Below the pieces are notes generated by a model. It was not told the origin of the DNA. It saw only the letters and a program-made list of their open reading frames with translations, and did not search any database. From IMG/VR virus record IMGVR_UViG_3300024358_000009, positions 124,001 through 188,000 of that record: DNA of 64,000 nucleotides; one strand, 5' to 3'. The translations under genes and the position numbers were made by a program. Numbering within the stretch: the first letter of the stretch is position 1; each line of letters begins with the position of its first letter. This document shows, piece after piece, positions 13,472 through 48,695 of this stretch.

Positions 13472-13500
13472 TTGTTTTTTATTTTATTGGACGATATACT
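13472..13500 (+). promoter_or_regulatory. Host sigma70-type promoter for the ECF sigma gene
   Basis: TTGTTT-N17-TATACT preceded by A/T tracts. Confidence 0.65.
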
Positions 13501-13556
13501 AATTACATAAGCAATGCACTTCGCAATGCTAACAGTAGTGAAAAGGAATTAGAATT

Positions 13557-14045
13557 ATGACCACTTCAATCGACTATGCAAAGATTACTGAAAAGCTTGT
13601 TTCCGCACTTGGCAAGAAAATACGCAACTATGCGGACTGCCAAGACATAGCTCAAAATATCCTAGTGTATGCTTTGCAAAGTTATAACCCTGCTATGGGA
13701 TCGGCTTTTGAAACGCACTGCTTTACTGTTATGCGTGGCAAGTCCATTGATTTCCTGAGAAGTAAATCCCGCAAGGGTAATCTGGTAAGCTGGGATATCC
13801 TTGAAGCTAATGACAATAATTCAGAAAAAACACTAGCACAAGGTATAGAAATTGCCGAAAAAACCTCCAAGTATAACCTATTGGAGATTGCAGAAGAATA
13901 CTGCAACGAACAAGAATATTTTATCATCCAACGCAAGCTTGAAGGCTTCGATGGATATGAAATAGCCAATATGCTAGGGGTTAGCCCAGGATATGTTAGT
14001 CAACAATTGTCAAGAGCAATAGAGAAAATGAAGGGGGGGTTCTAG
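13557..14045 (+). CDS. ECF-like sigma-70 factor
   Basis: 162 aa with only region 2 (DCQDIAQN...SIDFLR) and a region 4 HTH (GYEIANMLGVSPGYVSQQLSRA); AAAGGAA RBS. Confidence 0.85.
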   Translation: MTTSIDYAKITEKLVSALGKKIRNYADCQDIAQNILVYALQSYNPAMGSAFETHCFTVMRGKSIDFLRSKSRKGNLVSWDILEANDNNSEKTLAQGIEIAEKTSKYNLLEIAEEYCNEQEYFIIQRKLEGFDGYEIANMLGVSPGYVSQQLSRAIEKMKGGF

Positions 14046-14100
14046 GCCGAAATCGCCGATAGGCGATCTATCCGTTAGGCGGGTACTGATGAGGCCAGGA
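14040..14100 (+). ncRNA. Hammerhead ribozyme, type II (stem II open)
   Basis: GGCC-GAAA-UCGCC(GAUA)GGCGA-UC^-UAUCCG(UUAGG)CGGGUA-CUGAUGA-GGCC: complete core plus three stems; predicted cleavage after C14068. Confidence 0.92.
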
Positions 14101-14126
14101 GTCCTTAATAGAAAAGGGAATTGACT

Positions 14127-14294
14127 ATGTTGGAAAGTACTGAGAATGTAGCAACCATGGAATGCACAACTTGCGGGTTGACCATATCGGTAGAACGGTT
14201 GACCATGCGGGTCATATCTGAGAATGAAGTGCACCCCACATGCTGTATGTGCATGAGGGAATTGGAAGAATCTGAAACCCCATTGGGGGTTTAA
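14127..14294 (+). CDS. Small Zn-finger-like protein (55 aa)
   Basis: RBS AAAGGGAA; CTTC...CMC; followed by hairpin AAACCCCC/GGGGGTTT. Confidence 0.55.
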   Translation: MLESTENVATMECTTCGLTISVERLTMRVISENEVHPTCCMCMRELEESETPLGV

Positions 14295-14522
14295 TCTAAA
14301 GGGTTTTAACCTAACCTGCCAGTCTTACCCAACCTGGCCGGACCAGCCTCGGTACGCACATAGGTAATTGTATTACTTGTACTATGCCCGCAAAAATTGG
14401 ATATCTTTATCTTATTATCCAAATATCTTTTTAAAAATATTTTATTTTTATTGTAAATAAATCTGCAAGCGTAGCGAATAAGATTATATAAGAGAGAAGG
14501 GAATAAACAAAAGGAGAATAAA

Positions 14523-14681: not shown

Positions 14682-14724
14682 ATATTTTCTGGTACAGGAC
14701 GAATAAGTATAAAAGGAGATAAAG

Positions 14725-15315: not shown

Positions 15316-15380
15316 ACAAAAAAGTTTTTCCTGTTTTTTCCTAAATAAAAGCAGGGGGCAAGCGAATAAGAGTATATAAC

Positions 15381-15603
15381 GCTAGGGCACTTGCTGATAC
15401 AAGAGGGCCACTTCCTTGGTGAAAATGGGCTTATCAGAGTCTAAGTAACCTTAAGAGGATGGGATAGTTCGAGACTATCTGGCGTAACCATATAATGATA
15501 GGTATGTTTGGTGTTTAGGTGCAATCCTCCGTGAGATACGGCAAAACGAAAAACACCGTTTTTAAACCTGTTAGTGGGGATGTCTTATCCCTGCTAACCC
15601 TAC
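15381..15603 (+). ncRNA. Candidate structured ncRNA (about 220 nt)
   Basis: Starts just after the promoter at 15363; no RBS-led ORF; multiple helices, with G-U pairs favouring the + strand. Confidence 0.55.
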
Positions 15604-15880
15604 CGAAATTGGATATCTTTATCTAATTATATTCTTTTAAAATTTTTTTATTTTGTTGTAAATAATTTTACCCTGCCAGCGAATAAGATTATATAAGCTT
15701 GGTGGTAATGCTTAAACCATCTATGCGAATGAGTATAGAATGAGGGGAGCCTGGACTATAATTGGATAATCTTATCTTATTATATTATTTAAAATAATTT
15801 TATTTTTTTTGTAAATAAATCATAAGCACTAGCGAATAAGTATATATAAGAGATAACGATAACAACAAAAGGAGATTAAA

Positions 15881-16069: not shown

Positions 16070-16131
16070 AATAATTTTTTTATAAATATTTTAATCTTAC
16101 AAGCGAATAAGTTAGTATAAAGGAGAATGAT

Positions 16132-16815: not shown

Positions 16816-16868
16816 GAATTCTGGAAATAATTTTCTTTGGGAAACGAATAAGTAAGTAAGAGGTCAAT

Positions 16869-19312
16869 ATGTTTAAGTTAAGATTTCACTTGGCGAACGG
16901 TCCACATAAATATAAGTGGCAACTAAAAGATAGTGAAGGAAATGTTACCTATGTAGATCCTGAAAGTGTTAACTTCACAATGAAAAATTGTAAGTTGCAT
17001 AATAGCAAAAAGATAGCAGAAAGTATTTATTCAGGCAAAGAGAAGACCGTATGTTCTTGGATAGAATGCCAAGATATATCGATAAGGTTAAGTAGCGAAG
17101 AATTTCCTGACGAATTTTTTAATAACGAAGTAAGTTATAATCCAAGGTTGGCCCCCTTCTGGAGAAATGTAGAAGGAGAAAATATTGACGGTAAATTCTT
17201 TGAAGTGCTAGAGACAAAAGGAAGGAAGGTTTACGCATGAGTGTTGAAGAATGGTCAATCGCTGGTATGTTACTAGGTGCACTAATGATGAGCGGATCTT
17301 TACTTGTGCTAGGACTATCATGGGCAATTCAAAAGCTTGAAGAATACTGGGGGCCAATGTGATCTTTGAACAAACTATAGGTTACTTGATGTTTTTTCTT
17401 TGCGTAATGATCGCTAATTTTTTTCTTCTATTCTCAGGAGATAACTAAATGACATTAGCAGTAACGCTATTTACAGTTTATTTAGTTATTATGGCATTCA
17501 TGGGGGCAAACAAATGAAAAATAAATTTTTGTATAAAAAGTGTATTCCGTATAGCATTGCAGTTGTTTCAATAAAAGAAGATAAGCTTGTCTTAATTAAA
17601 GATAAAAATATGGAAAAAGAATTAAATGAAATAAATGAAGAATTTGAATCTGATGAAATAGAATATAATGAATTCATTAAACAAACAAACGAATGCTTAG
17701 ATCATTATTTTAGCTTGTATTATGCAAGCTAGACTTGCCAAATTAGATATCTTTATCCAAATATAATTTTAAAAATTTTGTAAATAATTTTTTATATATA
17801 GCGAATAAGAATACAGAGGGTAAACCCGCCATGGGAAACTATGGGATGGGCAGAGCCTGGACTATAATTAGATAACTTTATCCGATTATCTTTTTATAAA
17901 ATTTTTATTTTTTTTGTAAATAAATTATAACTAATCACGAATAAGATTATATAAGAGGAAACAACTAAAACGAAAGGAAAAGAAGATGGAACTTGTAAGG
18001 GAAATCAAAGATTGGGCTTTGGATAATTATGATGCTGGCGGTCATTGGATTGTTGAAACTTTTTCCGATGAGGAGATTGCCGAACAGTTCAAGACATTGA
18101 ACGAAGCTAAAAAGTATTGTGGTTTAATACAAGATAGGCACGAAGATATCTGCAACGCATAAGGAGAATGAAATGGATTTTGTACTTGAGAATGTAGGCA
18201 AGATGGTAAAATTTTGGAACTTAATGCCAGAAACCTACCAAGGTTTTGGCTATGAAGTTGAAGGAGATTGGGATTACGATGCTGAAAAATTTCAGCCAAA
18301 GTGGTTTCAGTTGTATGACGAAGAACAGGTTTTGAGGTTAGGTTATTGTCCTCCCGACCTTTTGCAATATGTCGAAAGGGCTTGCAAAGAAATTGCTGCT
18401 GACCTTGAAGCGAAAGGTTTAATAGGTGATACATTAATCGAAGAAGACGAATACACATATGAGGATTATTTAGCTGACAAGGCAGACAAAGAATATTACG
18501 AAAGGAACTAATCATGTTTAAGTTTGTAGAAAAGCTATTTGGTTTTGATAGTGGTCGAATTGAGTATCTTGAATCGAAATGTTTGGAACAATCGGAGCTA
18601 ATTAAAAACCTTGCAGAAGGATTTAAAGAACAAACATTGTTATTGCAAAAGATAAGTGAACGAAAGCAAGATATTGACTATGACAGAATTGATATAGATT
18701 ACTACGATTTGGCAAACAAGATTAATTTAAAAGCCGTAGCTAGTGGAGTAGGTCTTAAATATCTAGCAGAAGAAATTGATCTTGGCGAATTAGCCAACAA
18801 TATCAGCCTAGATGATTTAAGTAGTTATTTCAATGTGGATGAAGTAGCAGCTAACTTAGACTTAAATGAGGATGATTTTGTAGATACTATTGCAGAAAAA
18901 GTTTTGGAAAAACTTGTAAATAAATATAGGGCGAAAGCCGAATAAGTATATAGAAAGGAGATGGTCATGATTAAGTTTACTCTGACAACTAAACAATTTG
19001 AACGCAGAGGCGTTATGGCAAGAGGAAGCTCACGCTTTAAGGACGAAAGAAAAAATCCTAAAGGCGGTAGAAGTGGCGACAAAGTTAGATTTAAGAAGGG
19101 AGAATACTAAAATGGATGTTGATGTAACACTAAGTTTGGTTGAAATAAAACAAATTGTAGAATCTTTGAGATACGAAGTTAGGGTAAGCAATTACATGAG
19201 AAAACATCGTAGTGAATACGCAAACCATCTTATTGAACTATCCAATAGGTTGGAAAAAATAATGATCTATCATGCAAGGAAGGATGATAAAGTTAGATGC
19301 GAACAACCTTAG
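16869..19312 (+). CDS. Cluster of small hypothetical early genes (16869-17240, 17514-17732, 17986-18162, 18173-18511, 18514-18945 and others)
   Basis: Closely packed ORFs with RBSs downstream of CGAATA promoters. Confidence 0.65.
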
Positions 19313-19629: not shown

Positions 19630-20147
19630 GAAAAATCCGTAAGGATTTGCAAAATAGATGAACTTTTATGAAACTTGGTTTGCTACTTTCCCAAGGGGCA
19701 AAAAAAGTAGCACTTTTAATAATGTGCTGACAGTAAGCACTTTGTTTTCATTTATTGATATAAACTCTTTGGGTTCAATGACTTATGTTTATTTTTTAAA
19801 TTCTTCTTGTAAGGAATACTGGTATGTTTTCCTTACAAATATAGTGGGTAGGCTTGTCCTACCCCTTCTAAATTGACCGAAATTGGATATCTTTATCTAA
19901 TTGTAATTTTAAAAAATTTTTGTAAATAATTTTTATTAGCTGACGAATAAGTATATATAGAGAGGAGTAACTATTAAAATTTGAGTTATGAGTGGGAGTT
20001 CCTGCTTTCCAAAAGGAGAGGATGAGGGGAGCCTGGAAACTAATTAGATATGTTTATCTTATTATCTATTTAAGAATTTTTTTATTTTTATATAAATAAA
20101 TCTGTATGGCCAACGAATAAGATTATGTAAGAGGAAAGGAAAAGAAA

Positions 20148-20626: not shown

Positions 20627-20721
20627 TTTTGGAAATATTTGCCAATGGTTGGCGAATAAGTATATGTAAGGTTGAGAGTTTTAATTTATAGGGCTGAAAG
20701 CCCAAGAAAGGTTTGGTCATC

Positions 20722-21868: not shown

Positions 21869-21942
21869 GGGGATGTAGACCAACAGGCAGAGTCAAAGGA
21901 CTTAAAATCCTTCCAGTATGGGTTCGACTCCCATCATCCCTA
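21869..21942 (+). tRNA. tRNA-Leu (anticodon UAA), short variable loop, no encoded CCA
   Basis: Acceptor GGGGAUG/CAUCCCU; anticodon arm AAGGA-CUUAAAA-UCCUU; T arm AUGGG-UUCGACU-CCCAU; discriminator A. Confidence 0.92.
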
Positions 21943-22045: not shown

Positions 22046-22089
22046 ATTCTTATAAATATTTTTACCTCTGTATCGAATAAGATTATATA

Positions 22090-22173: not shown

Positions 22174-22334
22174 ATCCCCAATTCCCCTTATGGAAGGCCA
22201 AGTGGGCGGGTTTTCAGCGATTCCCTCACGCTCCTGTATATACTTATTCGTTATAGAAGCGGAAATATTTTTTTAATTTTATTTAAAATATTTTTGGTTG
22301 GTGAGCGAATAAGACTATATAAAGGAGAAAGCAA

Positions 22335-25300: not shown

Positions 25301-26619
25301 ATATAAACATCGGCGATCAAGTATACAACCCATTATCAGATGTTCTAATTCATATAGATGAAGATGATGACATTGAATATGTAAATAATAATTATTTTAA
25401 AATCTGTTAATATTTTTTAGTAAACTGCGAATAAATATATAGGAAAGGGGATTAGCAATGAATGAAAAGCTAGAAGATTTGAAATGGTTAGATGGACGAA
25501 AGGTTTTAAACTTTGTTGGTATTTTACCAGACGATGAGCATCAAGAATGTATTGACTGCAAGTTCACAGGACAAGTTCATGCTGAGTTTGAAGTAGAAGG
25601 ATTGGAAGAAGCTGAAGTAGTTTGCCCAAAGTGTGCAAGCCTACATTACTACATTGTTTAGTACCTATACATGAAGGAAATCAATCATGAAAATCAAAGT
25701 ATCGGACAGGGCGATATATGGATATATACCAACAGAAAATCCAAATGTATTTAATAGAAAAAGCGTAGTATTTATAAAAGACCGAGGTTATTTATTCCAA
25801 GAAAATTCAGTAAAGATCATTAAACAAATATTGGATGGCATCGTATATGAAATAGAAGAATCAACACCATATGATGCTAAAACGATTATGTTGGAAAATC
25901 CAAGAAGGTATAGCAAGAAAAGGTTGGGCGAACTTTTTGACATTCATGTAAAAGGAAATACCAATGAAGGAAATTAAGTATATCTATGTAGATGTAACAG
26001 CTAGGGTTTGTATATCTACATACGAAGACGATAAAGAGAACTCCATCCGTGGACTTAAACCAGATTTTGTTTCTACAGTTGGTGATTATGTAGAGTGGGT
26101 AAAAGTTGAAAAAGTTAATGAATTGAAAGTTTAAGGAGCAAACATGGAAAGTAATTTGAATGAAATCGCCCAAGGTGCAATTCATGGTGATTTTTTGGCT
26201 GATGTAAGTAAAGTTGGTGAAAACTTTGTTGTCAGCATTAAACACTATAAGCATGATGAAGACCATTGCCGTGGACAAAATCAAGTAGTTGGCGAACTAC
26301 ATAAGGCTATTGGGGCATTAAACCTCAATAAGCTTGAGAACATCACGCATGGTGGCGGTTTTGCTTGTGTAAAATGTAAGTAATAAAAGTTTAAAAGGAT
26401 AGTATCATGGCTAAAGTTTCTATCAATGCTGAAAACGCTTCTAACGCTTTTTTTAATGTGGCTGATGTAATTGAGTCATTAAAAAGGTTTGACAATGTTT
26501 TGGAATCCCCTATTTCAGATGACGATGATAATGGTTATTCCATCGGCGATTGTCTAGATGACATAAAAGCATTTCTTCAACAGCTAGATGAAGAATGTAT
26601 ATCATCTGACAAAAACTAA
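22335..26619 (+). CDS. Run of small hypothetical genes, including tandem paralogues at 24364-25168
   Basis: Dense ORFs of roughly 55-115 aa with AAGGAG-type RBSs and CGAATA promoters. Confidence 0.65.
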
Positions 26620-27418: not shown

Positions 27419-28051
27419 AATCGCTAGGTTTTCGGTTCAAATCCGAACAGACCCATTAAATAAACATTCTTTATCAACGGAGATAAATAATAATGCCCAG
27501 AACATTCCAAGCTAAGATTGTAATATTTGTCGAAGTTGATGTTCCTGACAATATGCCAGAATTAAATGTTGAAAGCTGGGTTAATTATGAGGCTAAACTT
27601 TTGGCAAATAAAATGTTGTGGGATGAAAAAACTAAATTTGAAATAGTTCATGTGGAATAAAAATATGACAAGAAAAGATTTCTTAGAACTGGTAGATAGA
27701 TCAAGGATGACAAACAGCGAAAGAATAAATGCTGGACTTCCTCTTGCAGAAGAAGATATTAGGCGAGTTCTAGATGAGTGTTATCCATATTTAAAGAAGT
27801 CAAAGGAATGGGAAAATGATAGAGATGGGTAATGGCTGGACTGTTAGCTTAAAAGACAATTCGTGTTTGAATAAACTATCATATCAAGAAAAGAAAAAAT
27901 GGTGGAATGATATAAAAAAAGTAACACCAATTCAATTTTCAGTAAAGGAAAAGGCAGATACAGCGAAGATATTATTAGAGAGAAGAACGAAATTTGAGTG
28001 GATTGTTACTAACACTCTTTTTCTTGGTCACTATCACGAAAAGAGACAAAG

Positions 28052-28133: not shown

Positions 28134-31100
28134 ATGAAAGGATTAATTATGGATGATTTTGTTTATGTGGTTAGACTTTCAGATCGTTACTACTTTGTGG
28201 GTTGGTGCAAAGTTGATGTTGTTAATTTCTGGAGAGAAATAAAGAGCATTGTAAATAAATTATATTTTGAAACCTATATAGAAGCAGAGGAAGTTGTAAA
28301 GCTTTTAAAAAGTAAAACAACTTTAAGTTGGGAAGTTAAACAAGTTAATCTGGAGGTCAAGCTATGAAAATTGATGACGCTATTAAGATGTTGCAGGAAG
28401 CAAAAGCGGAAGGGAATAAAAATATTATTTTTGCATTCTGGACAGCAGATATATTTACAAAAGTAAACGACAAGGGAGTTACTAAGAGTTATAAAGAAGG
28501 AGAAGTTTGGAAAAACTTGGTTGAGTTTATTGATAAAAATATGGATTGGGGTTATACGCACGAAGCATTACAAGAGATTATTAATGCTGTAAGAGGTGCT
28601 AAAAATGCATAAGAAACAAATTTTAGAATTTCTTGATGCAGAGACAGAGATAGAAGCTAGATCAAATATGTTTAGATATACAGAGTGCGGGGCGTTCATT
28701 GAATTCAAGGATGATCGTATTATAATTGGCTCAATTGTTGAAGGATCGGAAAATGGAACTGAATATTTTGAATTTGAATATGGCAAATTTACTGCAAATG
28801 AATTCCTAGATGCAATACAAGAAATTGAAAGACAGGCTAGTATAATCTGGGATTGGGCAAATAAAGAAGATGAGAATGGTCTTACAAATGCCGAGAAAGG
28901 ATATGATTGGCCACTACTATGATCAAAGAAGATTTTTTAAAATACCTGAATGCCAGTAATGAATACAGAGCTAGTGTTAATTTCAATTCTTATACAGAAT
29001 ATAAAGTATTCTTAAGATTTGATAAAAACTCTATTTGTTTACATACAGCAGATAATAAAAAATCTCATGTATTAGAATATGGTAAATTTACTAAAGAACA
29101 ATTTGATTTGCTCGTAGATGAACTGGAGAAGTAATGCATACATATTATGCAATTAAACATTCAAATAAAAAACCATGCATTGTTGGTATGGTTCAAGCGT
29201 GGAGAAGGGATACAGCTAATAAAATAGCAGAGGTTTGTTTTGCAAAAAGAAACTCTGACAGAGTGTATTTATATGTACAACCAAAGGGTTTTGTAGATAA
29301 AAATACAAAAAAATATATTTGGAGTAAATTTAAAAAGGTTGCTGACGAATAAATATATATAGCAAGAAAGGAGTTTGATATGACCAGCATGGAAAACAAG
29401 AAAGATTCAAAAAACAAGAAACCAAGATTATCCGATGAGGATATTCTTACTCAAGTTTTTATTCAATGTGGCCGTCCTAAAGACATAATCAAAACTGCTG
29501 TCGTTAATGTTTTTGATAATAGATATAGAGTTAATGTATGGCAAAGCATTAACAATCCATTTCTGCCAAAAGCCGGAAAGATTGTAGCAAGTTTTTTTGT
29601 GGTTGTTACTGACGAACTAGAGGTGAAAGTAATTAAATAAAGGAAATACAATGATTGAATCGCATGGAATGCTTTTAAATTATTTTTGTGTTGACCCATC
29701 TAATTATAAAAACGAAGTTCAAATAAACAACGATCTGTTTCCAGATGGCTTAACCATTAAAAAGGTTGACAATCTAACTGTTTTGTTAAAAGCAAAACAC
29801 GCAATGAAAATCTTGTTTTATCCAATTAAACTTAAAAAGTTAGAAACTGCTTGTAATAACTTAGCAAAAGAAATGAAGGAGGAATCCAATGAAATGGTTT
29901 CAAGATCATAGCAATGTTTGTGCATTAGCACGATGGCTGGCCGGACTTGGAGAGTGGGAAAATATTGGAGATATTGAACTTCCAAATGGACAAACTGTTG
30001 AGGACAATCCAGCCGATAGGCTTATTTACTTCTTTGAAAAACCTTGGAAATGGGATTCTGAATGGGAAGAATTTAAGAAATCTGGGCATTCGTAAGACGA
30101 ATAATATAATATAGGAAGGAGGATATAAAATGATTATACAAATTGATAACCAGTCTAGGCATATATTTGCTGTTGCTGCAAATTACCTTGTAGTAGACGA
30201 AGATAAGATCATTGGTGCTTTTATTACTAAGCGTGAAGCTATTGCACAAGAAAAGGTATATAAAAATGCTAAAGATGATTGCATTGATCTTGTGTCTTAT
30301 GATGCTTAATGGGTGTGGAACTGTTGAGCAATCTGTATCAACCAGCATATCTCCCTATGATTCTAGAGAGATAGAAAAAGTAAATGTGAGTTTTAGATAT
30401 ACTTATACTTTTCCAAAATAAGGAGAATAAAATGAAAATGTATCTTATTAATGGTTATAAAGATAACCAAATTCGTGCCGGACTTCTTGAAAAAGAGTGG
30501 CAAAGTAAAAATGGCACTCCTCTTGTAACATTAAAAATTATTGACCATTACAATGAACATAAGACTGTTTACAGGACTTATCATAAAAATAAATTGGCGG
30601 TAATGAAAGTTCTTGAAATGGATGACAATCTTTTATCTAAATAACTGTACTACTCATACTAGAAGGGTTGAAAATTAAATGGCTAACAAAGGACAAAGCT
30701 GGAAACAAAATCGCTCTATTACTCCAGAAGAATTTGTAAAGGTATTTACCGAAAAGGATTCTTTTGAAGAAGTGGCAGAATATTTTGGCCTTAGTGTTTC
30801 TTCTGTAAAGAACAGGGCGTACTCCTTAAAAAGATCTGGCGTAAACCTAGTGACAAAAAAGAAAAATGCCAAACCATTTTTTGGAACTCAGGGATTTGAT
30901 GTGGATTCGCTAAATAAAATCATTCAGAAGGCGAATAAATAAATAGAGGAGACTAAAATGCCACTAAAGCCAACTGCCGGTGCTGACTATTTTTTAATCT
31001 TTGGTTGTATCTTAACTTTTGTTATAGGTCTTTTTAGGAGTAATAGATATGTATAGAAGGTTCTTTATTACAACTGTAGCGTCTGTTCTTACAGCTGGCT

Positions 31101-32998: not shown

Positions 32999-33658
32999 AT
33001 GATAAATCATTTTATCGAAACTAGATTTAATTTAAAGTATTCTTTTATAAAATATAAGAAGCATTTAAATGAAAATTGGTTAAATTATAGATTAGAATTA
33101 TTTAATAAATTCTGCGCCCCATCAGTTTTAGGACAAAAAAACAAAAACTTTTTTTGGATGATTAAATGTGATTCAGAAACACCAAATGAAATCTTAAACA
33201 AAATAAAAATAGATGATAGAATACATATTTATTTTAATAAAGATGAAAATTTAAATATAAGAAAAGAAATTTCTAATTTAAACCATCCATTTGTTTTCTC
33301 TAGATTTGACAGCGATGATATTTATAGAAATGATTTTACAGAAGAAATAAAAAATAATTCTTCAGTATATGAAGACGAATATCTTATAGATATAAATTAT
33401 TCATCTTTTGATTTATCAAAAAATTTATTTTGTCAAAAAAATATTTATCCTTCTCACTTTGTAAGTATAAAAACAAATAATATTGAAAAAGACATTTATG
33501 AAGATAAACATGTTAATTATTCAAGTAAATATAAAATATTTAAAATAAAAGAAAATTTAGCACTAGAATTAATACATGGAAAAAATATATCTAATAAATT
33601 TAATGAAAATGCAAAAAAAATAGATATAAATTTATCTGATTATAATATACTGCTGTAA
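32999..33658 (+). CDS. Putative rhamnosyltransferase-family glycosyltransferase
   Basis: Motifs HFIETRFN, RLELF..FCAPSV..Q...NF.W and SRFDSDD. Confidence 0.75.
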   Translation: MINHFIETRFNLKYSFIKYKKHLNENWLNYRLELFNKFCAPSVLGQKNKNFFWMIKCDSETPNEILNKIKIDDRIHIYFNKDENLNIRKEISNLNHPFVFSRFDSDDIYRNDFTEEIKNNSSVYEDEYLIDINYSSFDLSKNLFCQKNIYPSHFVSIKTNNIEKDIYEDKHVNYSSKYKIFKIKENLALELIHGKNISNKFNENAKKIDINLSDYNILL

Positions 33659-33709
33659 ATAATTACTGACAATTGGCGAATAAATATTAAGCAACAAAAG
33701 GAGTTTATT

Positions 33710-36700
33710 ATGAAGATAGAAATGGATGGCGAAAAGTATCTTCTTTTTGCAAGTGAAAATGTGAAGCGTGTTTTTTTAAGCAATAAGGTAGCCATATTTG
33801 ATTTAGTAAAACTTTATAAAAATAAACCTTTTACTAAAACTGGCACATGTACAATTGTTAATGTTGGGAATACAAATGTCAGTATTTTAAATATAAAAGC
33901 TTTAGATTTTGAAACTCAGGAAAACATTAATTGTTTTGTGTTACATTGCGTAGGAAATTATAAAGAATTAACGCCAGTAGCAGCTAATAAATGGTCAGTA
34001 ACTCTTTATTGTGGACATAAAGCGATTATTGATGAAACAGTTGATTCGATTGATAAAGATCATAAAGTTCATTGTTTTTTATGTGAGAAGAAAAATTAGG
34101 AATGAGCTATGTCAGAACTAATTATTGAGGAATTAAAAAAAAGAATTCAAGAACTTGAAGAAAAGAATAAAAAGCTGCGTAAAGCATGTCAAAGAGCGTT
34201 TGACTTCGTTGATGACGAAGACAACAATAAAATAGTAGTTAAAATGCCTTTCTCATTTGGTCTGCATTGTGATTTAGCCGAAGCTTTAGATATTCGTGAC
34301 CTAAAAAATTTGAAGGATTAATATGGAAAAGGAAATGATAAATTTAATTTTTGCGATGTATCAGTTGTCTGGTGGGAATAATGGAGAATTGTTTGCGAAG
34401 CTAACAGTAGAAGAACAAACTGTTTTAAGGTCTATCGTTTTTTCAAAGTTATTTTTTAATACAGAGATAAAAAATGGCAATTAAAAGAAACTGCTTCTGC
34501 TGCAATAAAAAACTCAAAGGTTTATATACTAATATAGAAGATCCTCCGTATGACGCTGTATCTTTTTCATCAGATGGAAAATATGGAAGTTCTATATTTG
34601 ATCCATATGAAGAAAATGCACGAATAGAAATTTATATATGCGATGAATGTCTTAAAAAGAAAGCGAAGCTTTCTTATTATTATGAACTAGAACAAAAAAT
34701 AGAGATTAAAAATATTCAGTCTTTTGACAAGAAACTAAAACAGGATGAAGCTATTATTAAAGAAAGAACTAAAAAGTTAATAGCTGCCGTAAAGAAATTT
34801 AAGAGGATGAAGAAAAATGACAAGAGAAGAAGCTGAAATTTATTGCGAAGAAATTGGAGCAAACCCTTTGTATGCAAATGGTTATGACGATTGTATAATT
34901 GGAGTTGGAAGAATATTTCATGATTATAAAATAATCTATGACACTAATAAGATTTTACATAAAATGGTAGAAGAACAAGGCATGACAACTGAAGAAGCTA
35001 TAGAGTTTTACGAATATAATATGGTTGGTGCATACATGGGCGAAGGCACTCCTATATTTTTGGAAAATCATAATGAACAATGAGCAGTTAAACAAAATAA
35101 AAGAAACATGGAAACCAAAAGTAGATAAGCATTATGGAGAATGCTATTTGGCAAATGCAAGATGTGCAATACATTTTCTTTTACTAGAAATAGAAAGGCT
35201 AAAAAATGACATTGCCACAAGAAAGAACAAGGAGTGTGATACAAACTAGAGATTTTTTAATAGATTTAATTAATCCCAAAAAAACGCCAAAAGTTCCAAA
35301 ATACATAAGACTTTCAGCAAAAAGACTTTTAAGACATTTTCCTTGGGATTATCATTTAAAACAAATATCTAAAAAAAATCCTGATGTATTCGGTGACATA
35401 AATGACATATTTACTTTTTCTATTACTAATAATTTTAAGTTTTCTAACGATAAAAAGTATAAGAAAAAATCAAAAAATACTAAAAATCTTTGAAGAAGAG
35501 GCGAATAAGATTATAGATGAAAAGTGCGGTTTAGAAATATTAAAAGTTATTTGTTCAATAGAAAATAAAATACGGAAAATAAAATGACAGATGAAGAAAA
35601 AATTAAATTAGTTATAGAAACAAGAGATGTTTTTGGAGATCCAAGAAGATTGTGTTTGCTTCTTGTTGATGAGATTAAAAATCTAAGATTAGAACTGGAA
35701 AAAGCAAAAGCATATGACTACAGATCCTATGCACCGAATGTTTGGACGCAAGCAGGAGAAAAATATGTTTTCCTGCAATAAAAAAGATGGCAATGGATTT
35801 AAAATTGGTTTTAAGAATGGATATACTTTGTCAGTAAGATTTGGAGTAAGAAACTACTGCGAAAATTTAGGCAAAGAAGATAAGAAATTTTTAAAATCAA
35901 GTGATGCAGAAATAGCCATTATTGATCCAGCAGGAAAGCTAATGCAATTAAATGATCAAGATGCAATATTGGCAAATCAATCAGCAGAAGATTTAGTAGA
36001 AACGCTTTTTAAATATTTTATGATGAAAAATGAAACCTATTAATGTTTTTTTATTAGTGATTTTAGCATTGGTTGGAAGTTATTATAAACAATATATTTA
36101 TCACAAGGAAATTGGTGAAAAATTAATGAATAACCTTTATGAGATGGAACAAAGAGTTATACCAGACGAATCTATTAATGATGTTCCTGCTTATTCAGAA
36201 AAACAAATGATAAAGATAAAAGTAATTCATGAGTGCCAACAACTTATTTATGAGGAGTTTAAGTTATGGAAGTAACAGAAGAATTTATTCAAGAGATTGA
36301 AAAAGACATGCAATCCAATAATGGAAATTGGGTTTCTAATGAAAATGTTACCAAGCTTATTGCAGAAATAAGAAGATTGAAAGGGCTTATTAAGCCATGT
36401 TGTCAGAAAAAGAATTGCGTGAAATAGAAAATAGATTATACAGAGCAACTCCTGGTCCTTGGGTTTCTTCGTATTCTGAAAATGGAAAAACAAGCATATA
36501 TTCAGAAAGTAAGGAGCGAGCATATTTTTATCATGGAGAATGGATTGCAGATGTATCTACGGAAGAAGACTTAAAATTTTTAGTTAATTCTATAGAAGAT
36601 ATACAAAAGCTTTTGAAAGAAGTTTATAGGCTAAAGACTATTTTGGATAAAAACATGTATAAAGAAATTGTTGAAGCATTTTGTCATAAATTAAGTGGAA

Positions 36701-41773: not shown

Positions 41774-43465
41774 CCATGTCATATTTTTTTAATGTTTGGA
41801 TAGAATACATCGGTTGTGATAATGTAAAGAAAAGAAAGTTTTTAAAAAAAATTAATGATTATAATGATTGTTTACCATTATTATTAGAAAGCGAGTATAT
41901 AAAAGAATACCTTTTTATGCCAAAATGCATTGTTATATTAGAGGATACATTTGGAAATGACATGAGACTAAAACCATTGTTTGAAAATGATAAGTTTTTT
42001 CTTTTGTGTGAATAATGAAAAATGTTTTTTTCAAATTAAATAACGAAAAGTTTTATGTTATAGCTGGAGATACAGCTAAACGAGAAAAAGAAAAATTAAA
42101 GTGTTCTTGGAAAACATTGCTTAGTGTTTTATGTAAAGAAAATTTTCCAAATATAAAAAAGGTGACAGAAAAAACAGAAAATAATCATATTGTTACAATA
42201 CCATTTTTTGAGGAGTTAATTTTTTTTGTAATGACAATTATGTATAAAGATAAAAAAATTTTTGTCGTAACAGCAAATGAAAAGGTTAAAAAGTTTAAAT
42301 TAAAAAAATTTGGTAAGTGGATAGCGGAATTAGAATGTGGGCATACTTTTTTAATGGATAGCGGAGTAGATGATTACAGATTTATAAAAAGAATATTTTG
42401 TCCTACATGTATGGAGAATACCGATGGTTCAGTTTTTAAATGAATTAAAAACATTTATAGAAAACAAAAGCGATGAATGCAAACTAAAACCAGAATTAAA
42501 AATTACTGAATCAAAAATTTTGTTTATTACATCAAATAACTATTTAATATCAAAATATTTTTTAGATGTATGCGAAAAGTTTTTGAATAATAAGAATTTA
42601 ATAATTACTGAAAATAAAAAAACTTGTTTGAATTTGGAAAAATCATTAGAAGATATTGTTTCTATTATAAAAGAATCGTGTCATTATGGATTTGATCATG
42701 CAATATTATTGAATAATTATGATATTTTTTTTGATGATGAAACATGTATTAGTGTTGCAAAAGAATTAATTGATTATTCTAAAAATTCAAATGATAACTT
42801 AAAAATGATTATAATTTTGACAAACAGATCAAAAACTATAGAGCCGTTTTTAATGCACAGTCCAAATCATTTAAAAGTAAATCAAGCATGGTGTCTCGGT
42901 AAATATATTTGTAGGAAAATCGAAGAAAAGAGTATGGAGCAAATACTTTCTGAAACGATTAATGCAGTTAATGATACTCTTAATTGTAAATATTATTAAA
43001 GGCATTTCTATTGGTGTGTTTATTTATTTTATGATTAAATTTTTAAGGAGAGGAATATGAAGTCTCTAAGATCTGATCTACACAGCGAAATTAGTACAAC
43101 CAGCGGTTCTTTGGTTTTAATACCTCTAGAAAAATTTCAAGAACTAATAGGTTTTTCAGACGATGAAGATTTTGAAATTGTATCTGAAATAATTGATAAC
43201 GGCGGAGATATTATAAACATAAATCCATATGTAAATTTAGAGGTAAGAAAAAGATTTACTTTAAATGCAGACGGCACAAATGATACGGTTATTCAAATAG
43301 CACCAAAAAATGAATCTAAAGACTTTGTAAGACTTTTAAACAAGGATGAAGAGACATTAGAAGAATTTTCTTTGCGTAAGAAAAAAGAATTAAAAATGAA
43401 TACCGAAGAAATGATTAAGTCATTTACAGATATTAGAAACGAATACTTAGAAAAGATGGATATAA

Positions 43466-45321: not shown

Positions 45322-45757
45322 CAATTTTTAAAAATGCTTCTTGTTGTTCTTTCGGGCCAGCAAATTTAATTGAATTTGATCCATACTTCCTTATTAAAAC
45401 AAGCATGTGTTTGGCTATATAATTTATTACAGATTTTCCTAATTCTGAATCAGATGCATTTTCCCACACTTCTTGACCTAGCATGTGGGCAAAACCAAGA
45501 TCATTTTGTTTTGGTGCTGGATAAAACATTAAACCAAGATTATTGGGTCTAATGGTTTCATCGCCTGGCAAAATACCTAAAACCCAAGAACAAGACCACT
45601 TTCTACATATTTCCGGTCTTGTATCATAAATCATACAGCCTTTGTTTTGGTGATGACAATTTGTATATTCTGGCTTGTTTAGTTCTTGAACAATTAAAAT
45701 TGTGCAACAAACATCACAATCACTACAATGTCTATCAGCCAATGGTAAATTGATCAT
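45314..45757 (-). CDS. YkgJ-like CxxCxxCC protein
   Basis: CSDCDVCC...GCMIYDTRPEICRKW. Confidence 0.8.
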   Translation of the reverse strand: MINLPLADRHCSDCDVCCTILIVQELNKPEYTNCHHQNKGCMIYDTRPEICRKWSCSWVLGILPGDETIRPNNLGLMFYPAPKQNDLGFAHMLGQEVWENASDSELGKSVINYIAKHMLVLIRKYGSNSIKFAGPKEQQEAFLKIAK

Positions 45758-45760
45758 ATA

Positions 45761-46273
45761 TTATCCATGCCAAATTTTTTCTTCTGGACCCAAAAGTCTA
45801 GCCAAGGTAAACAAAAAATCACTCAATCTATTTATATATACAACTATTTTCTTTAGGTTTTGATGAACTTCCATTAATTTGACTAAATCAATTTCAACCC
45901 TTCTACATACTGCTCTTGCTAGATGAATTTCACAATGATTAAAAGGTATTATAAAGTTTTTCAATGGCTTTAAAAGCTTAGTCATGTCGTCAATTTTGCC
46001 TTCTATTTCTTTAATATGCTTGTCATCTATTCTTGCTTCGCCCGTAGCTATTTCAGCGCCTATATCAAATAAATGTTTTTGTATGTCTACAATAAAATCA
46101 TAAGCGTTTTGAATTTTTAATTCTAAAACATATTTTTGATTTACTAAACCTATTGAAGCGTTAAGTTCATCAACACTTCCTAACAATTGAATGTGTGGGT
46201 CAGTTTTTGGAACACGCCCAACTTTAGGCAAAAAGGTTGTTCCATCATCTCCTGTTTTAGTATAAATTTTCAT
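45761..46273 (-). CDS. pduO: ATP:cob(I)alamin adenosyltransferase, PduO type
   Basis: Motifs KIYTKTGDDGTT, GSVDELNA, HLARAVCRRVE and YINRLSDFLFTLAR. Confidence 0.93.
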   Translation of the reverse strand: MKIYTKTGDDGTTFLPKVGRVPKTDPHIQLLGSVDELNASIGLVNQKYVLELKIQNAYDFIVDIQKHLFDIGAEIATGEARIDDKHIKEIEGKIDDMTKLLKPLKNFIIPFNHCEIHLARAVCRRVEIDLVKLMEVHQNLKKIVVYINRLSDFLFTLARLLGPEEKIWHG

Positions 46274-46913
46274 TCTTGCTCCATTCCATTATTTTTAATT
46301 TTGATTCCATACCTATTTTTGTAAATGGAAAACCATGAAAACCAAATGGTTTATCAAAAAACTCAGGTCTTTTATGTTCGATAGAAAATTTAAAAGCTGT
46401 TTTAATGTCTGGGAATTTAAAACCATTATCTACTAATTCATTATATGATTGATTGCATATTTCTAAATCTTCATTGAATATAATTTGTTTATCTTTATAT
46501 TTATTAGATATAAACTCTAAAAGTTTTTTTGATCTTAAACTAAATCCGCCATTACCAACTTTATTTATGTATTCATCATTTTTCCAAGGTGCGCCTATAT
46601 AATCATATTCTAAGAATGAATCATCCCATGAGTTTGGATTTATTATAAATCCATCGTGTTGAATCACTAAAACATACTTAGTATTAATAAATTTATTCAA
46701 ATCTACTAAAATAAATTTACTATATTCTTCTTTGCTTTTTATTTTATTGACTTGTATATGTTTTATTTTGTTTGTTTTTACTTTTTGTTCATCAGATATA
46801 AAAATAGATTCTTTAAAATTAAAGAATTGCATACTATACAACATAGCTGCAATCGCTTTTTTATGATTAACGCAATCTACAGAACAAATAGTTATGTCTT
46901 CAAAAAAATTCAT
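46257..46913 (-). CDS. DUF5672-like glycosyltransferase-related protein
   Basis: Motifs VIQHDG, YDYIGAPW, VGNGGFSLRS, NED and FGFHG. Confidence 0.8.
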   Translation of the reverse strand: MNFFEDITICSVDCVNHKKAIAAMLYSMQFFNFKESIFISDEQKVKTNKIKHIQVNKIKSKEEYSKFILVDLNKFINTKYVLVIQHDGFIINPNSWDDSFLEYDYIGAPWKNDEYINKVGNGGFSLRSKKLLEFISNKYKDKQIIFNEDLEICNQSYNELVDNGFKFPDIKTAFKFSIEHKRPEFFDKPFGFHGFPFTKIGMESKLKIMEWSKNENLY

Positions 46914-47400
46914 AAAGACATATTAATCTTTTTCTATTAGAGTCAATAGATATTTTTTCAAAAGTTGGTTTTATTTCAAACCATTTCAATAATGTATTTT
47001 CATCTATATTATGATGACAGTTATTTGGTTTATTCCACTTATATGGAACTGATATTATAGCTTTGTTAACTATTTTTTTTATTTGATTAAATACTTCTGT
47101 TTGTTTGTTTTTAAAATGTTCAAAAGTTTGTAAACATATTAATAAATCAAATCTTTCTTTAAAATCCCAAGGGGTTTTTGTGCAATCAAAAACATGATTG
47201 ATTTCACTATTATATTTTGAATCTATTCTTGTTGAATTTAAACATAGCGGAAAAGATGAGCAACCTAATTCAAGAACAGACTGAGGACTTAAACTCTTTG
47301 CTAGTTCTATAGCATCATTATAATAATTCCATCTATTTATAAAATATTTATCTTCTAAACACTTTTTATTATAGTCTGCTTTTGTTATAAATTTAATCAT
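46900..47400 (-). CDS. Class I SAM-dependent methyltransferase
   Basis: Motifs SVLELG and FDLLICLQTFEH. Confidence 0.7.
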   Translation of the reverse strand: MIKFITKADYNKKCLEDKYFINRWNYYNDAIELAKSLSPQSVLELGCSSFPLCLNSTRIDSKYNSEINHVFDCTKTPWDFKERFDLLICLQTFEHFKNKQTEVFNQIKKIVNKAIISVPYKWNKPNNCHHNIDENTLLKWFEIKPTFEKISIDSNRKRLICLYEFF

Positions 47401-47789
47401 TTTTTAGGAGATTTAGTTTTAATGCCTAATTTTTTATATACATTTCTAGCTTTTGGATTATCATCTATAGCTAATATAATTTTATCTTTTATTGATTGTG
47501 CATGTTTTCTTTTAGACTCTAGCTGATCTTTTGGACTTCCACCAATGTTATTCATCATTAAGCGATTGTATTTCAATCCTGCTTTTTTTAATGATTTAAC
47601 AGTTTCTGATCTATTAGATTCTGGTCTTCCAGTAATCATATATATTTTATGATCTTTTGACAATTCATTTATATAATCAACCATTTTTTTTATTGGATAT
47701 ATACCATTTCTTAAAACGGTATTATCTATATCTACAATAACAACAGAAGATACAGAAAAAAACTGTTTAATTTGGTTTGCAATCGACAT
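47397..47789 (-). CDS. HAD-family phosphatase (PNKP phosphatase-like)
   Basis: Motifs VDIDNT, ITGR and IDD. Confidence 0.8.
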   Translation of the reverse strand: MSIANQIKQFFSVSSVVIVDIDNTVLRNGIYPIKKMVDYINELSKDHKIYMITGRPESNRSETVKSLKKAGLKYNRLMMNNIGGSPKDQLESKRKHAQSIKDKIILAIDDNPKARNVYKKLGIKTKSPKK

Positions 47790-47965
47790 TTGTTCTTCCC
47801 ATAGTTATATTTTTTGTTGCAACAACATCCTTATTAGTAAATTCCCATATTAAGCCATTATTTAATATAACTGTAAATATTTTTTCTATCTCAGTACCAT
47901 ATTCAGTTACGAGCCAAATTCTTCCTCTTCCTTTAGGTGTTTCAACTTCTAATTCTTGTCTTGGC

Positions 47966-48646
47966 TCATATATTACAATTGACATTTTTTATCTCTATTA
48001 AAGAATCTCTCCTGCATAAACTTTGATAAAGTTCTTTATCGCTTGACCATTCTTTACCTGTCCACCATTCAAAGCCATTAAACTGATTTTTATAAAGAGA
48101 ACATTCTTCATAACCGCCCATCATATAATAATAAATACACCCAGATCTTTTTGCTAAAGTGCATTCTATTAGTGTACTTATACTTCCTAAAGATAAAGAC
48201 GGTTTTTCATAATCCCAAGCAAACTGAACACCTATGAATGATTTTTTAAATAGTTTATAACAAACAAATCCTATTAGATTTGATTCATAAAAATATTGTA
48301 TAGTATTTTCTAACATTAATTCATTGTCAAAAACATGTTCACTTATAAAACCTTTTTTAGATTGATATGAATTTGAAATTCTTAAAATATCTTCATTTGA
48401 AGGTTTTCCAATTTGATATTCTATTTTTTTTGCAAGTTTTTTTGTTTTTTTATGGAATTCGATTTTTGAAAGGTTGTATCTGACACTTCGAGATTGAAAC
48501 CAATAATTATCCCAAGGCAACCATCCTTGCTCAAGCAAATCATCAAAGTTATCATTTATATCTGGGTAAGCAAAAATAGGTGTATAAATCAAATCTTGAT
48601 TTGAAACTTTTCCAAAACCATTTATATGATCAAATATAATTTTCAT
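47966..48646 (-). CDS. Bpt/ATE1-like aminoacyl-tRNA-protein transferase
   Basis: LLEQGW...SVRY N-terminal part; C-terminal WDY..PSLSLG....E...AKR.G..YYY.....YK..F pattern. Confidence 0.7.
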   Translation of the reverse strand: MKIIFDHINGFGKVSNQDLIYTPIFAYPDINDNFDDLLEQGWLPWDNYWFQSRSVRYNLSKIEFHKKTKKLAKKIEYQIGKPSNEDILRISNSYQSKKGFISEHVFDNELMLENTIQYFYESNLIGFVCYKLFKKSFIGVQFAWDYEKPSLSLGSISTLIECTLAKRSGCIYYYMMGGYEECSLYKNQFNGFEWWTGKEWSSDKELYQSLCRRDSLIEIKNVNCNI

Positions 48647-48695
48647 AATAAATACTACACCCTAATAAGCGAATAAAATGTTAAAGGAGTAAGTT

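What the first reader, a model, noticed from the sequence alone, without database searches (positions are those of the whole stretch)
13472..48675. Self-contained sigma cascade: host sigma70, then a phage ECF sigma, then about 30 GTAAAT-N16-CGAATA promoters
Seen: the ECF-like gene has a sigma70-type promoter, while downstream units share a bipartite motif with near-invariant 16-bp spacing. In several cases the -10 doubles as the upstream stop codon (GAA TAA at 18945, 20327, 29352). Known: ECF promoters typically have an AAC-like -35 and a CG-starting -10. Inference: the regulon of the phage ECF sigma is readable directly from sequence and could serve as an orthogonal expression system.
Basis: partly seen in the sequence, partly recalled or inferred. 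Interest (0 to 1): 0.65.

Follow-up and report, generated by a model that had tools for sequence, protein, structure and literature searches.

The report
Phage ECF-type sigma factor with readable regulon
An uncultivated river-water phage of about 149 kb carries its own small ECF-type sigma factor followed by about 30 copies of one two-part promoter, and a sister phage lineage has changed the sigma's DNA-reading domain and the -35 box together, so the sigma-promoter pairing can be read from sequence; this kind of phage sigma cascade is already known.

Summary
xTAAAT-N16-CGAATAAG occurs 28 times on the + strand between w14453 and w48648. In the whole 206-kb record it gives 48 forward and 3 reverse sites, against 1.7 in shuffles. 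Most sites lie 18-60 nt before a start codon. The gene at w13557-14045 is a two-domain sigma (regions 2 and 4) that passes the ECF superfamily model.

Two comparisons tie sigma to promoter. In a relative whose sigma is 59% identical, the boxes are 85-94% conserved at orthologous positions, against 45-50% for flanks and spacer. In a clade whose sigma is 27% identical, region 2 and the -10 (CGAATAA) are kept, while region 4 has diverged and every -35 is TTGAAT instead of xTAAAT.

Caveats:
- The proposed sigma70 promoter of the sigma gene is a weak match and is not conserved in the sister clade.
- The record probably joins two variants of a roughly 149-kb genome, with the junction at w25318.
- The cascade looks longer than described: a second sigma-like gene (w11140-11772, minus strand) and a TGGTGTAAT motif before structural genes suggest a late tier.

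This is a new member of a known kind.

The parts
13557..14045 (+). ECF-type sigma factor gene (P0001, 162 aa; regions 2 and 4 only)
   Evidence: Pfam r2 and r4, phrog_1740, TIGR02937 53.5 bits against cut-off 42.9. Best solved relative is M. tuberculosis ECF SigH, E 0.013.
13455..13540 (+). Near-invariant non-coding block upstream of the sigma gene; unique in the genome
   Evidence: Almost identical in the window, L008 (sigma 76% identical) and L006 (59%). No second copy in the record. No ECF-type site upstream of the sigma gene.
13472..13500 (+).
   Evidence: Read from sequence. 3/6 and 5/6 matches. Not listed by the consensus scan. Equivalent hexamers are not conserved in the sister clade.
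13511..13529 (+). Direct repeat GCAATGC-N5-GCAATGC in the sigma leader
   Evidence: Conserved in the window, L008 and L006; single copy. Function unknown.
14121..14294 (+). 57-aa Cys-rich (zinc-ribbon-like) gene after sigma, with no ECF site between the two
   Evidence: ORF with Shine-Dalgarno. No Pfam hit; weak Lar-like PHROG hit at 0.009. No counterpart gene is called after the sigma in L006.
14453..14480 (+). ECF-type promoter, 39.3 bits
14678..14705 (+). ECF-type promoter, 31.6 bits; the -35 TAA is the stop of the ORF ending at 14681
   Evidence: orthologous site in L006.
15341..15368 (+). ECF-type promoter, 34.3 bits; no ORF downstream
15658..15685 (+). ECF-type promoter, 43.2 bits (best); a short non-coding unit follows
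15811..15838 (+). ECF-type promoter, 41.7 bits; 42 nt before the 62-aa gene
16082..16109 (+). ECF-type promoter, 33.8 bits; before the GP88-family gene
16823..16850 (+). ECF-type promoter, 36.0 bits
17780..17807 (+). ECF-type promoter, 38.5 bits; a conserved short non-coding unit follows
17916..17943 (+). ECF-type promoter, 35.7 bits
18916..18944 (+). ECF-type promoter with 17-nt spacing (10.6 bits in the N16 matrix); the -10 TAA is the stop at 18945
19922..19949 (+). ECF-type promoter, 42.2 bits
20092..20119 (+). ECF-type promoter, 35.3 bits
20299..20326 (+). ECF-type promoter, 37.2 bits; the -10 TAA is the stop at 20327
20631..20658 (+). ECF-type promoter, 41.0 bits; before the DUF932 gene
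22052..22079 (+). ECF-type promoter, 33.6 bits
22284..22311 (+). ECF-type promoter, 26.7 bits
22917..22944 (+). ECF-type promoter, 36.1 bits
23141..23168 (+). ECF-type promoter, 32.9 bits
25406..25433 (+). ECF-type promoter, 31.6 bits; twin of the site at record position 89
27942..27969 (+). Weak candidate, 10.0 bits, inside a gene; doubtful
   Evidence: No counterpart in the other variant.
29324..29351 (+). ECF-type promoter, 29.0 bits; the -10 TAA is the stop at 29352
30910..30937 (+). ECF-type promoter, 33.4 bits
   Evidence: Kept in variant A at record position 6977.
33655..33682 (+). ECF-type promoter, 29.2 bits; the -35 TAA is the stop at 33658
35480..35507 (+). ECF-type promoter, 23.8 bits
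38763..38790 (+). ECF-type promoter, 23.1 bits
40849..40876 (+). ECF-type promoter, 25.9 bits
   Evidence: Kept in variant A at 14932.
42899..42926 (+). ECF-type promoter, 27.1 bits (-10 is CGAAGA)
   Evidence: Kept in variant A at 17005.
48648..48675 (+). ECF-type promoter, 25.8 bits
   Evidence: Kept in variant A at 22757.
15610..15630 (+). Upstream element TGGATATCTTTATCTAATTAT, 31-43 nt before the -35.
   Evidence: Also present before five L006 promoters. Function unknown.
11140..11772 (-). Second, divergent sigma-like gene (210 aa, Cys-rich insert) near the head of the structural-gene arm
   Evidence: Sigma70_r2 at 2.8e-5 and 5e-4, below cut-off; TIGR02937 at 24.6 bits, below cut-off. Top fold matches are nearly all sigma factors but weak. 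57% identical in the sister clade.
6761..6768 (-). Candidate late-promoter motif (T)GGTGTAAT, 41-48 nt before the portal gene. Also at 3913-3920 (-), 26693-26700 (+) and 61096-61102 (+, before the ribonucleotide reductase gene).
   Evidence: TGGTGTA is the top 7-mer upstream of minus-arm genes, 7 against 0.19 expected. Conserved before the portal-like gene in L006, L009 and L011..
25318..25457 (.). Junction where the record passes from the shared core into variant B (140 bp, 97% identical to record positions 1-140)

Best explanation
The window comes from a lytic-type phage with a genome unit of about 149 kb, found in river water. Where the two gene arms diverge, the phage encodes a 162-aa ECF-type sigma factor. 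This sigma joins the host's core RNA polymerase, because the phage has no beta or beta' homologue. It directs the enzyme to about 30 phage promoters per genome unit, of the form xTAAATA(A/T)(A/T)TT-N-gCGAATAAG.

Region 4 of the sigma reads the -35 box (TAAAT). Region 2 reads the -10 box (CGAATAA). Transcription should start about 6-8 nt after the -10, in the conserved TATA, giving leaders of about 15-25 nt.

The promoters are densest and closest to consensus in the 9 kb right after the sigma gene, with nearly one per small gene. They thin out over the next 35 kb. The sigma therefore drives a delayed-early or middle class of small takeover-type, DNA-modification and auxiliary genes. The sigma gene itself has no such promoter, so a host holoenzyme must transcribe it first.

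Shown here: the motif statistics, the sigma family assignment, conservation at orthologous positions, and the matched sigma/-35 change between clades. Inferred: that the sites fire, the start positions, the timing, and the nature of the host promoter.
For: 1. Motif statistics: 44 hits against 11.9 expected. 48 forward and 3 reverse sites against 1.7 in shuffles. N16 spacing in 28 forward pairs, against at most 3 at neighbouring spacings. CGAATAA is the top 7-mer upstream of sigma-proximal genes, 20 against 0.91 expected, p 2.6e-20.
2. Placement: sites lie 18-63 nt before start codons. The first site is 408 nt after the sigma stop codon, and there is none upstream of the sigma gene.
3. Family: TIGR02937 above cut-off over the full length, plus Pfam r2 and r4.
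4. Footprint: at 10 orthologous promoters in L006 (sigma 59% identical), identity is 0.85 for the -35, 0.94 for the -10, 0.50 for the spacer and 0.45-0.50 for the flanks. L006 has 14 forward and 0 reverse sites, all after its sigma gene.
5. Matched change: the sister clade L009/L010/L011/L099 (sigma 27% identical, same gene order) has 16, 5, 5 and 7 sites of TTGAAT-N16-CGAATAAT and no xTAAAT sites. The window clade has 26 and 14 xTAAAT sites and no TTGAAT sites. The protein alignment covers region 2 well, and the pairwise alignment stops before the recognition helix of region 4. Within the window clade the region-4 helix-turn-helix is invariant.
6. No phage polymerase: no beta or beta' homologue was found, with positive controls ringing.
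7. Known ECF promoters have the same layout, with a -10 starting in CG and 14-17 bp spacers (PMC5758882).
8. The region is present in 24 river metatranscriptome runs from 22 studies.
Against: A 1,391-nt JGI contig spans the sigma gene with about 400 nt upstream, so it gives no start.

The pairing of sigma and motif rests on co-occurrence in only two clades. A second sigma-like gene always travels with the first, so co-occurrence alone does not separate the two.

The -35 lacks the AAC that is typical of cellular ECF promoters. The sigma shows no autoregulation and no recognisable anti-sigma, so it is atypical for the family. The host is unknown.
Confidence: 0.75

Rival explanations
1. A host ECF sigma reads the promoters, and the phage sigma does something else.
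For: The layout is generically ECF-like (PMC5758882). The host is unknown. If the host is a planctomycete, as the origin of one auxiliary gene hints, it would have many ECF sigmas; this last point is from general knowledge.
Against: The -35 box differs between two phage clades in step with their own sigma's region 4. The motif is at chance level, 0-2 per genome and equal to the reversed control, in five 3-5 Mb MAGs of the candidate host lineage. The promoter array begins right after the phage sigma gene in every relative.
Confidence: 0.07
2. The second sigma-like protein (w11140-11772) reads the bipartite promoters, and P0001 reads another class.
For: Both genes co-occur in all relatives. Assignment by co-occurrence alone cannot separate them.
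Against: The second protein is 57% identical between clades whose -35 boxes differ, whereas P0001 is 27% identical with a diverged region 4. The second protein has only a sub-threshold region 2 match and no scored region 4, which fits a single-element promoter better. TGGTGTAAT is such a single-element motif and is the same in both clades.
Confidence: 0.07
3. The repeat is not a promoter. It could be a mobile intergenic cassette, a recombination site, or an RNA processing or termination signal.
For: Several copies sit in longer repeats of about 100-130 bp at 77-80% identity. Some copies carry a further conserved upstream element.
Against: Only two short boxes at fixed spacing are conserved, while the spacer and flanks drift. 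The sites are strictly on the coding strand and at a fixed short distance from start codons. Some overlap the ends of coding regions. Terminator-like sites are not enriched in the region.
Confidence: 0.04
4. The host's primary sigma reads these sites directly, and the host simply has an unusual consensus.
For: The host is unknown, and some phyla have non-canonical primary promoters (general knowledge).
Against: The sigma gene and the minus-strand arm lack the motif. The -35 box differs between sister phage clades. The candidate host-lineage MAGs do not carry the motif above chance.
Confidence: 0.04

Closest known systems
phiEco32 gp36 and phage 7-11 sigma (coliphage and Salmonella phage)
   Same: A phage-encoded, distantly sigma70-related factor redirects host core polymerase to phage middle and late promoters after host promoters act first. 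For 7-11 the regulon was read from the genome sequence (PMC4331800).
   Different: Those promoters are a single 9-bp element (tAATGTAtA) and a phage anti-sigma is present. Here the promoters are bipartite with N16 spacing and no anti-sigma is recognised. No detectable sequence relationship was seen.
Bacillus phage SPO1 gp28 (middle) and gp33/34 (late) sigma cascade
   Same: Host sigma A acts first, then phage sigmas take over (PMC13401047 abstract). Two phage sigma-like genes and several temporal promoter classes. That gp28 promoters are bipartite is from general knowledge.
   Different: Different consensus. In SPO1 the dense array of strong promoters before small takeover genes is read by host sigma A (general knowledge); here the equivalent array carries the phage-sigma motif. 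No sequence similarity was found.
Cellular ECF (group 4) sigma regulons, for example B. subtilis sigma W, X, M and V
   Same: Two-domain sigma. A -35 rich in A (tGAAAC), a -10 beginning with CG (CGTA, CGTC, CGAC), 14-17 bp spacers, and an A/T tract just after the -35 (PMC5758882).
   Different: The -35 ends in AAAT rather than AAC, and the -10 is CGAATAAG. There is no autoregulatory promoter and no recognisable anti-sigma. The regulon is a phage gene arm rather than a stress response.
Orthogonal ECF sigma and promoter toolboxes
   Same: The idea of using sigma-promoter pairs as insulated switches, with the -35 and -10 read by separable domains (PMC3817407, PMC6101570).
   Different: Those parts are cellular and tested. 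These parts are from phages and untested.
T4 gp55-type late sigma with a single-element late promoter
   Same: This comparison applies only to the side observation: a divergent region-2-like protein beside the structural genes, and a single short motif (TGGTGTAAT) before them. Knowledge of gp55 is general.
   Different: No sequence match to gp55 was tested or seen. The protein here has a Cys-rich insert and a C-terminal helical part.

Membership tests
ECF (group 4) sigma70-family sigma factors | Only regions 2 and 4 are present, with no region 1.1 and no region 3 | tested here: met
   162 aa. Pfam r2 covers residues 14-72 and r4 covers 126-159, with no r3 hit. TIGR02937 matches positions 12-162 of 165.
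ECF (group 4) sigma70-family sigma factors | Score above the curated family model cut-off | tested here: met
   TIGR02937 at 53.5 bits against cut-off 42.9. No equivalog or subfamily model is reached; the best is Sig70_bacteroi1 at 43 against 126. Pfam Sigma70_ECF at 15.6 is below its cut-off of 21.1.
ECF (group 4) sigma70-family sigma factors | Cognate promoters with an AAC-type -35 and a CG-type -10 at a 14-17 bp spacing | tested here: inconclusive
   The spacing of 16 and the CG-start -10 are met. The -35 is TAAAT or TGAAT and has no AAC (PMC5758882). That the sigma reads these sites is inferred, not shown.
ECF (group 4) sigma70-family sigma factors | Positive autoregulation from its own promoter type (typical, not universal) | tested here: not met
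   There is no matrix site upstream of w13557. The nearest upstream forward site on the record is about 90 kb away.
ECF (group 4) sigma70-family sigma factors | Co-transcribed anti-sigma factor (typical, not universal) | tested here: inconclusive
   The next gene (57 aa, Cys-rich) has no Pfam hit, and no counterpart gene is called after the sigma in L006. Binding was not tested.
Phage-encoded sigma cascades (SPO1, phiEco32 and T4 type) | The sigma gene is carried by a phage that lacks its own RNA polymerase | tested here: met
   Capsid, portal and other phage genes are present. No beta or beta' homologue was found, with positive controls ringing. The T7-like search found nothing, but its controls did not ring either.
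Phage-encoded sigma cascades (SPO1, phiEco32 and T4 type) | A phage-specific promoter class distinct from host-type promoters precedes a block of phage genes | tested here: met
   Sigma70-consensus sites are depleted in the same region, 31 against 55.5 expected.
Phage-encoded sigma cascades (SPO1, phiEco32 and T4 type) | The sigma gene is expressed from a host-type promoter | tested here: inconclusive
   TTGTTT-N17-TATACT is a weak match inside a fully conserved block. The hexamers found in one sister-clade member are not conserved in the others.
Phage-encoded sigma cascades (SPO1, phiEco32 and T4 type) | Sigma-dependent initiation at the promoters | not testable with these tools

The most novel reading that the evidence does not exclude
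This is a previously undescribed lineage of freshwater phages of about 149 kb, possibly infecting planktonic Planctomycetota. It would run a three-tier programme with two phage sigmas placed back to back where the two gene arms diverge. An ECF-type sigma, whose -35 specificity has switched between sister clades (TAAAT against TGAAT), would drive about 30 early or middle promoters and several small non-coding RNAs. A zinc-ribbon-bearing, region-2-only sigma would drive late structural genes from a single-element TGGTGTAAT promoter. The two clades would then offer a natural pair of sigma-promoter sets with different specificities.
Probability: 0.35. Interest if true: 0.6.

Novelty: new member of a known kind. 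Interest (0 to 1): 0.5.

Why it matters
Phage sigma cascades are textbook regulation, but few have been worked out, and almost none in uncultivated environmental phages. Here the whole regulon, its strength gradient and its specificity determinant can be read from sequence.

The natural -35 switch between two clades is a ready-made experiment on how region 4 of an ECF sigma encodes specificity.

In practice it offers two compact sigmas (162 and 177 aa), each with dozens of graded natural promoters, as candidate insulated expression parts. It also gives annotators a way to assign temporal classes in a common river phage that is present in 24 metatranscriptome runs from 22 studies.

Tried and rejected
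The Rfam scan was started at w14460, and one script suppressed printing there.
   - ARAGORN was run on the whole window by reference, which includes the stretch.
2. Contig ends as a proxy for RNA ends. Short contigs carrying the sigma gene start about 400 nt upstream of it, so they are uninformative.
3. Close relatives in GenBank phages. Megablast found none. tblastn with the sigma and the portal gave one weak hit each.
4. Rfam at gathering thresholds found only two tRNA-Leu genes.
5. Conservation between variants A and B of the record gave only a modest contrast, 0.90 for the -10 against 0.78 for flanks, because the two are too similar. The L006 comparison was used instead.
6. Other copies of the sigma gene's upstream block: none found.
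7. T7-like RNA polymerase search: no hit, but the controls did not ring, so this says nothing.
9. The large protein representative search and complex prediction were not used. The family scans settled the protein's identity, and I make no binding claim.

Full report
**What the window is.** The window is positions 124,001-188,000 of a 206,326-bp IMG/VR virus record.

Left of about w11,880 the genes run on the minus strand. They include a major capsid protein (w964-1953), a portal (w4588-6720) and a nucleotide-sugar epimerase. Right of that point almost everything runs on the plus strand. Most of these are small genes of unknown function, with DNA and tRNA methyltransferases, glycosyltransferases, thymidylate synthase and ribonucleotide reductase further on.

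Over the whole record the plus arm runs from about 136 kb through the record end and start to 69 kb. The minus arm runs from 69 to 136 kb. GenBank phages hold nothing close.

**The record is probably more than one genome.** Self-comparison shows that positions 1-58,947 are 70-83% identical, in order, to 149,318-206,319. The first 140 bp are 97% identical to 149,318-149,457.

- A second assembly of 221 kb holds both copies 149.9 kb apart. A third contig shows the sigma region followed by the other copy type.
- A JGI contig of 149,444 bp carries the same GP88 gene.

I read this as two co-occurring variants of a genome of about 149.4 kb, with an identical core and a diverged arm of about 59 kb, strung together by the assembler. 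The window crosses that junction at w25,318. The gene order in the window is still that of one genome unit (core plus variant B), so the finding stands. Counts over the whole record, however, count the variable arm twice.

**The observation.** The motif is real.

- GTAAAT-N16-CGAATA with up to 2 mismatches gives 44 hits against 11.9 expected.
- A weight matrix finds 48 forward and 3 reverse sites at >=10 bits in the record, against 1.7 in shuffles. Of these, 28 lie between w14453 and w48648.
- Sixteen is the only favoured spacing.
- The conserved core is xTAAATA(A/T)(A/T)TT ... gCGAATAAG-N3-TATA.
- Most sites lie 18-63 nt before a start codon that has a Shine-Dalgarno sequence.
- CGAATAA is by far the most enriched 7-mer upstream of the sigma-proximal genes, 20 against 0.91 expected.
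- Scores are highest (27-43 bits) in the 9 kb after the sigma gene, where nearly every small gene has its own site. They fall to 10-33 bits (median about 27) further on.
The TAA of the -10 ends ORFs at 18945, 20327 and 29352. The TAA of the -35 ends ORFs at 14681 and 33658.

**The sigma.** P0001 (w13557-14045, 162 aa) has regions 2 and 4 and nothing else. It passes the NCBIfam ECF superfamily model over its full length but reaches no subfamily model. It matches PHROG sigma families. Its best solved relative is an ECF sigma, M. tuberculosis SigH, but only weakly. The phage has no beta or beta' homologue, so the sigma must work with the host core enzyme.

**Linking sigma and promoters.** Two comparisons support the link.

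The first is a footprint. A Logan contig, L006, carries a sigma that is 59% identical, in the same gene order. It has 14 forward and 0 reverse matrix sites, all after its sigma gene. At ten orthologous promoters the -35 is 85% identical and the -10 is 94% identical, while the spacer and flanks are 45-50% identical.

The second is a matched change. A sister clade in IMG/VR (L009-L011, L099) has the same gene order and a sigma only 27% identical. Every one of its 16, 5, 5 and 7 sites reads TTGAAT-N16-CGAATAAT, and it has no xTAAAT sites. The window clade has 26 and 14 xTAAAT sites and no TTGAAT sites.

In the protein alignment, region 2 aligns well and the pairwise alignment stops before the recognition helix of region 4. 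Within the window clade that helix-turn-helix is invariant. So a conserved region 2 goes with a conserved -10, and a changed region 4 goes with a changed -35. That is what the standard model of sigma domains predicts (PMC5758882, PMC3817407), and it is hard to explain if a host factor read the sites.

The motif is also at chance level in five MAGs of the only host lineage I could suggest.

**What is not shown.**

- No transcription start was mapped. Details of how I worked around that stretch are in Tried and rejected.
- The first step of the cascade is an inference. The sigma gene has no ECF-type site, so another holoenzyme must read it.
- That candidate sits in an 85-bp block where every base is conserved among close relatives, so the hexamers cannot be singled out.
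- A TTGACT-N17-AATACT in one sister-clade member is not conserved in the others.
- Sigma70-like sites are, if anything, depleted across w11500-26000, 31 against 55.5 expected.

**The cascade looks longer than described.** A second gene, w11140-11772 on the minus strand (210 aa), lies second on the structural arm, after a 46-aa ORF.

- It gives sub-threshold region 2 and ECF-superfamily hits.
- It is 57% identical in the sister clade.
- It folds into a model (pLDDT 67) whose best PDB matches are nearly all sigma factors, though weak. The best overall is E 0.037. The match to the SigE N-terminal domain has probability 0.99.
- The most enriched 7-mer upstream of minus-arm genes is TGGTGTA, 7 against 0.19 expected.
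- GGTGTAAT sits about 50 nt before the portal-like gene in the window, L006, L009 and L011.

I take this as a likely late tier with a single-element promoter, but it is only partly followed up. I found no promoter for the second sigma gene.

**Comparison with what is known.** The system works like the phage sigma cascades of SPO1 and of phiEco32/7-11 (PMC13401047, PMC4331800). Its promoters look like cellular ECF promoters (PMC5758882).

As a family member, P0001 meets the structural and model-score criteria for ECF sigmas. It does not meet the typical criterion of autoregulation. The criteria of an anti-sigma partner and of an AAC-type -35 are unresolved: the -35 reads AAAT.

It is therefore a new member of a known kind. 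Its distinctive points are the size and cleanness of the regulon, the natural -35 switch between clades, and its origin in an abundant uncultivated river phage.

The use as an orthogonal expression system is plausible by analogy (PMC3817407, PMC6101570) but untested.

**Host.** The only hint is a DUF1501 gene (w39313-40593) that is 65-73% identical to genes of freshwater Planctomycetota MAGs. The nearest group has about 44-45% GC. This shows the gene's origin, not the host.

Noticed in passing
window 25318-25457; record G000 1-58,947 against 149,318-206,319: The 206-kb record holds two diverged copies (70-83% identical) of a 59-kb arm, exactly one genome unit of about 149.3 kb apart. Other assemblies show both junction types, and a 149,444-bp contig exists. 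The record is probably two phage variants joined by the assembler, not a 206-kb genome.
   Followed up: yes
window 11140-11772 (-): Second, divergent sigma-like gene with a Cys-rich insert, near the head of the structural arm. It is conserved (52-57% identical) in all relatives. Fold matches are nearly all sigma factors, but weak.
   Followed up: partly
window 6761-6768 (-), 3913-3920 (-), 26693-26700 (+), 61096-61102 (+); L006 about 3603 (-), L009 about 4242 (-): (T)GGTGTAAT lies 26-90 nt before structural genes and before the ribonucleotide reductase gene. TGGTGTA is the top 7-mer upstream of minus-arm genes. The motif is conserved before the portal-like gene across clades. It is a candidate late promoter.
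   Followed up: partly
window 15610-15630, 15763-15783, 17744-17764, 17869-17889, 19884-19904, 20045-20065: A conserved element, TGGATATCTTTATCyAATTAT (an imperfect inverted repeat GGATA-N4-TATCC), lies 31-43 nt upstream of the -35 of the strongest promoters. It is also present in L006. It could be a regulator site or an UP-like element.
   Followed up: partly
window 15369-15610, 15686-15762, 17808-17868, 19950-20044: Promoters w15341, w15658, w17780 and w19922 are followed by stretches of 60-270 nt without a credible ORF. Three of these end in a shared GAGCCTGGA(C/A)-type tail. The w17808 stretch is about 85-90% identical in L006, more than coding DNA. The w15375-15640 stretch folds with z = -2.35. 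These are possible phage small RNAs.
   Followed up: partly
window 22245-22272 (-): The only strong reverse-strand match to the promoter matrix (22.9 bits). It points against the gene flow, back to back with the forward site at w22284, and only a 38-aa ORF lies downstream.
   Followed up: no
window 13230-13330: A G+C-rich tract with C and G runs and a short hairpin sits in an A+T-rich genome, between the 2OG-Fe(II) oxygenase gene and the sigma promoter region. A similar tract lies upstream of the sigma gene in L006. It might be a terminator, an origin or a packaging site.
   Followed up: no
window 21869-21942 and 28052-28124 (+): Two tRNA-Leu(UAA) genes.
   Followed up: no
window 39313-40593 (+): A DUF1501 gene is 65-73% identical to genes of freshwater Planctomycetota MAGs, the nearest group having about 44-45% GC. 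It is an auxiliary gene of planctomycete origin and a weak host hint.
   Followed up: partly
window 45314-48520 (-): A minus-strand island lies inside the plus arm. It encodes a cobalamin adenosyltransferase, DUF5672, a methyltransferase-like protein, a HAD phosphatase and an ATE_C-like protein. It has lower G+C and reversed skew.
   Followed up: no
window 11825-11854 (+): TTGTGC-N18-TATAAT lies just before the first plus-strand gene (w11891). It is a better sigma70-type candidate than the one proposed for the sigma gene.
   Followed up: no
window 26733-27344 (+): An HNH endonuclease gene lies 1.4 kb past the variant junction and is preceded by GGTGTAAT.
   Followed up: no
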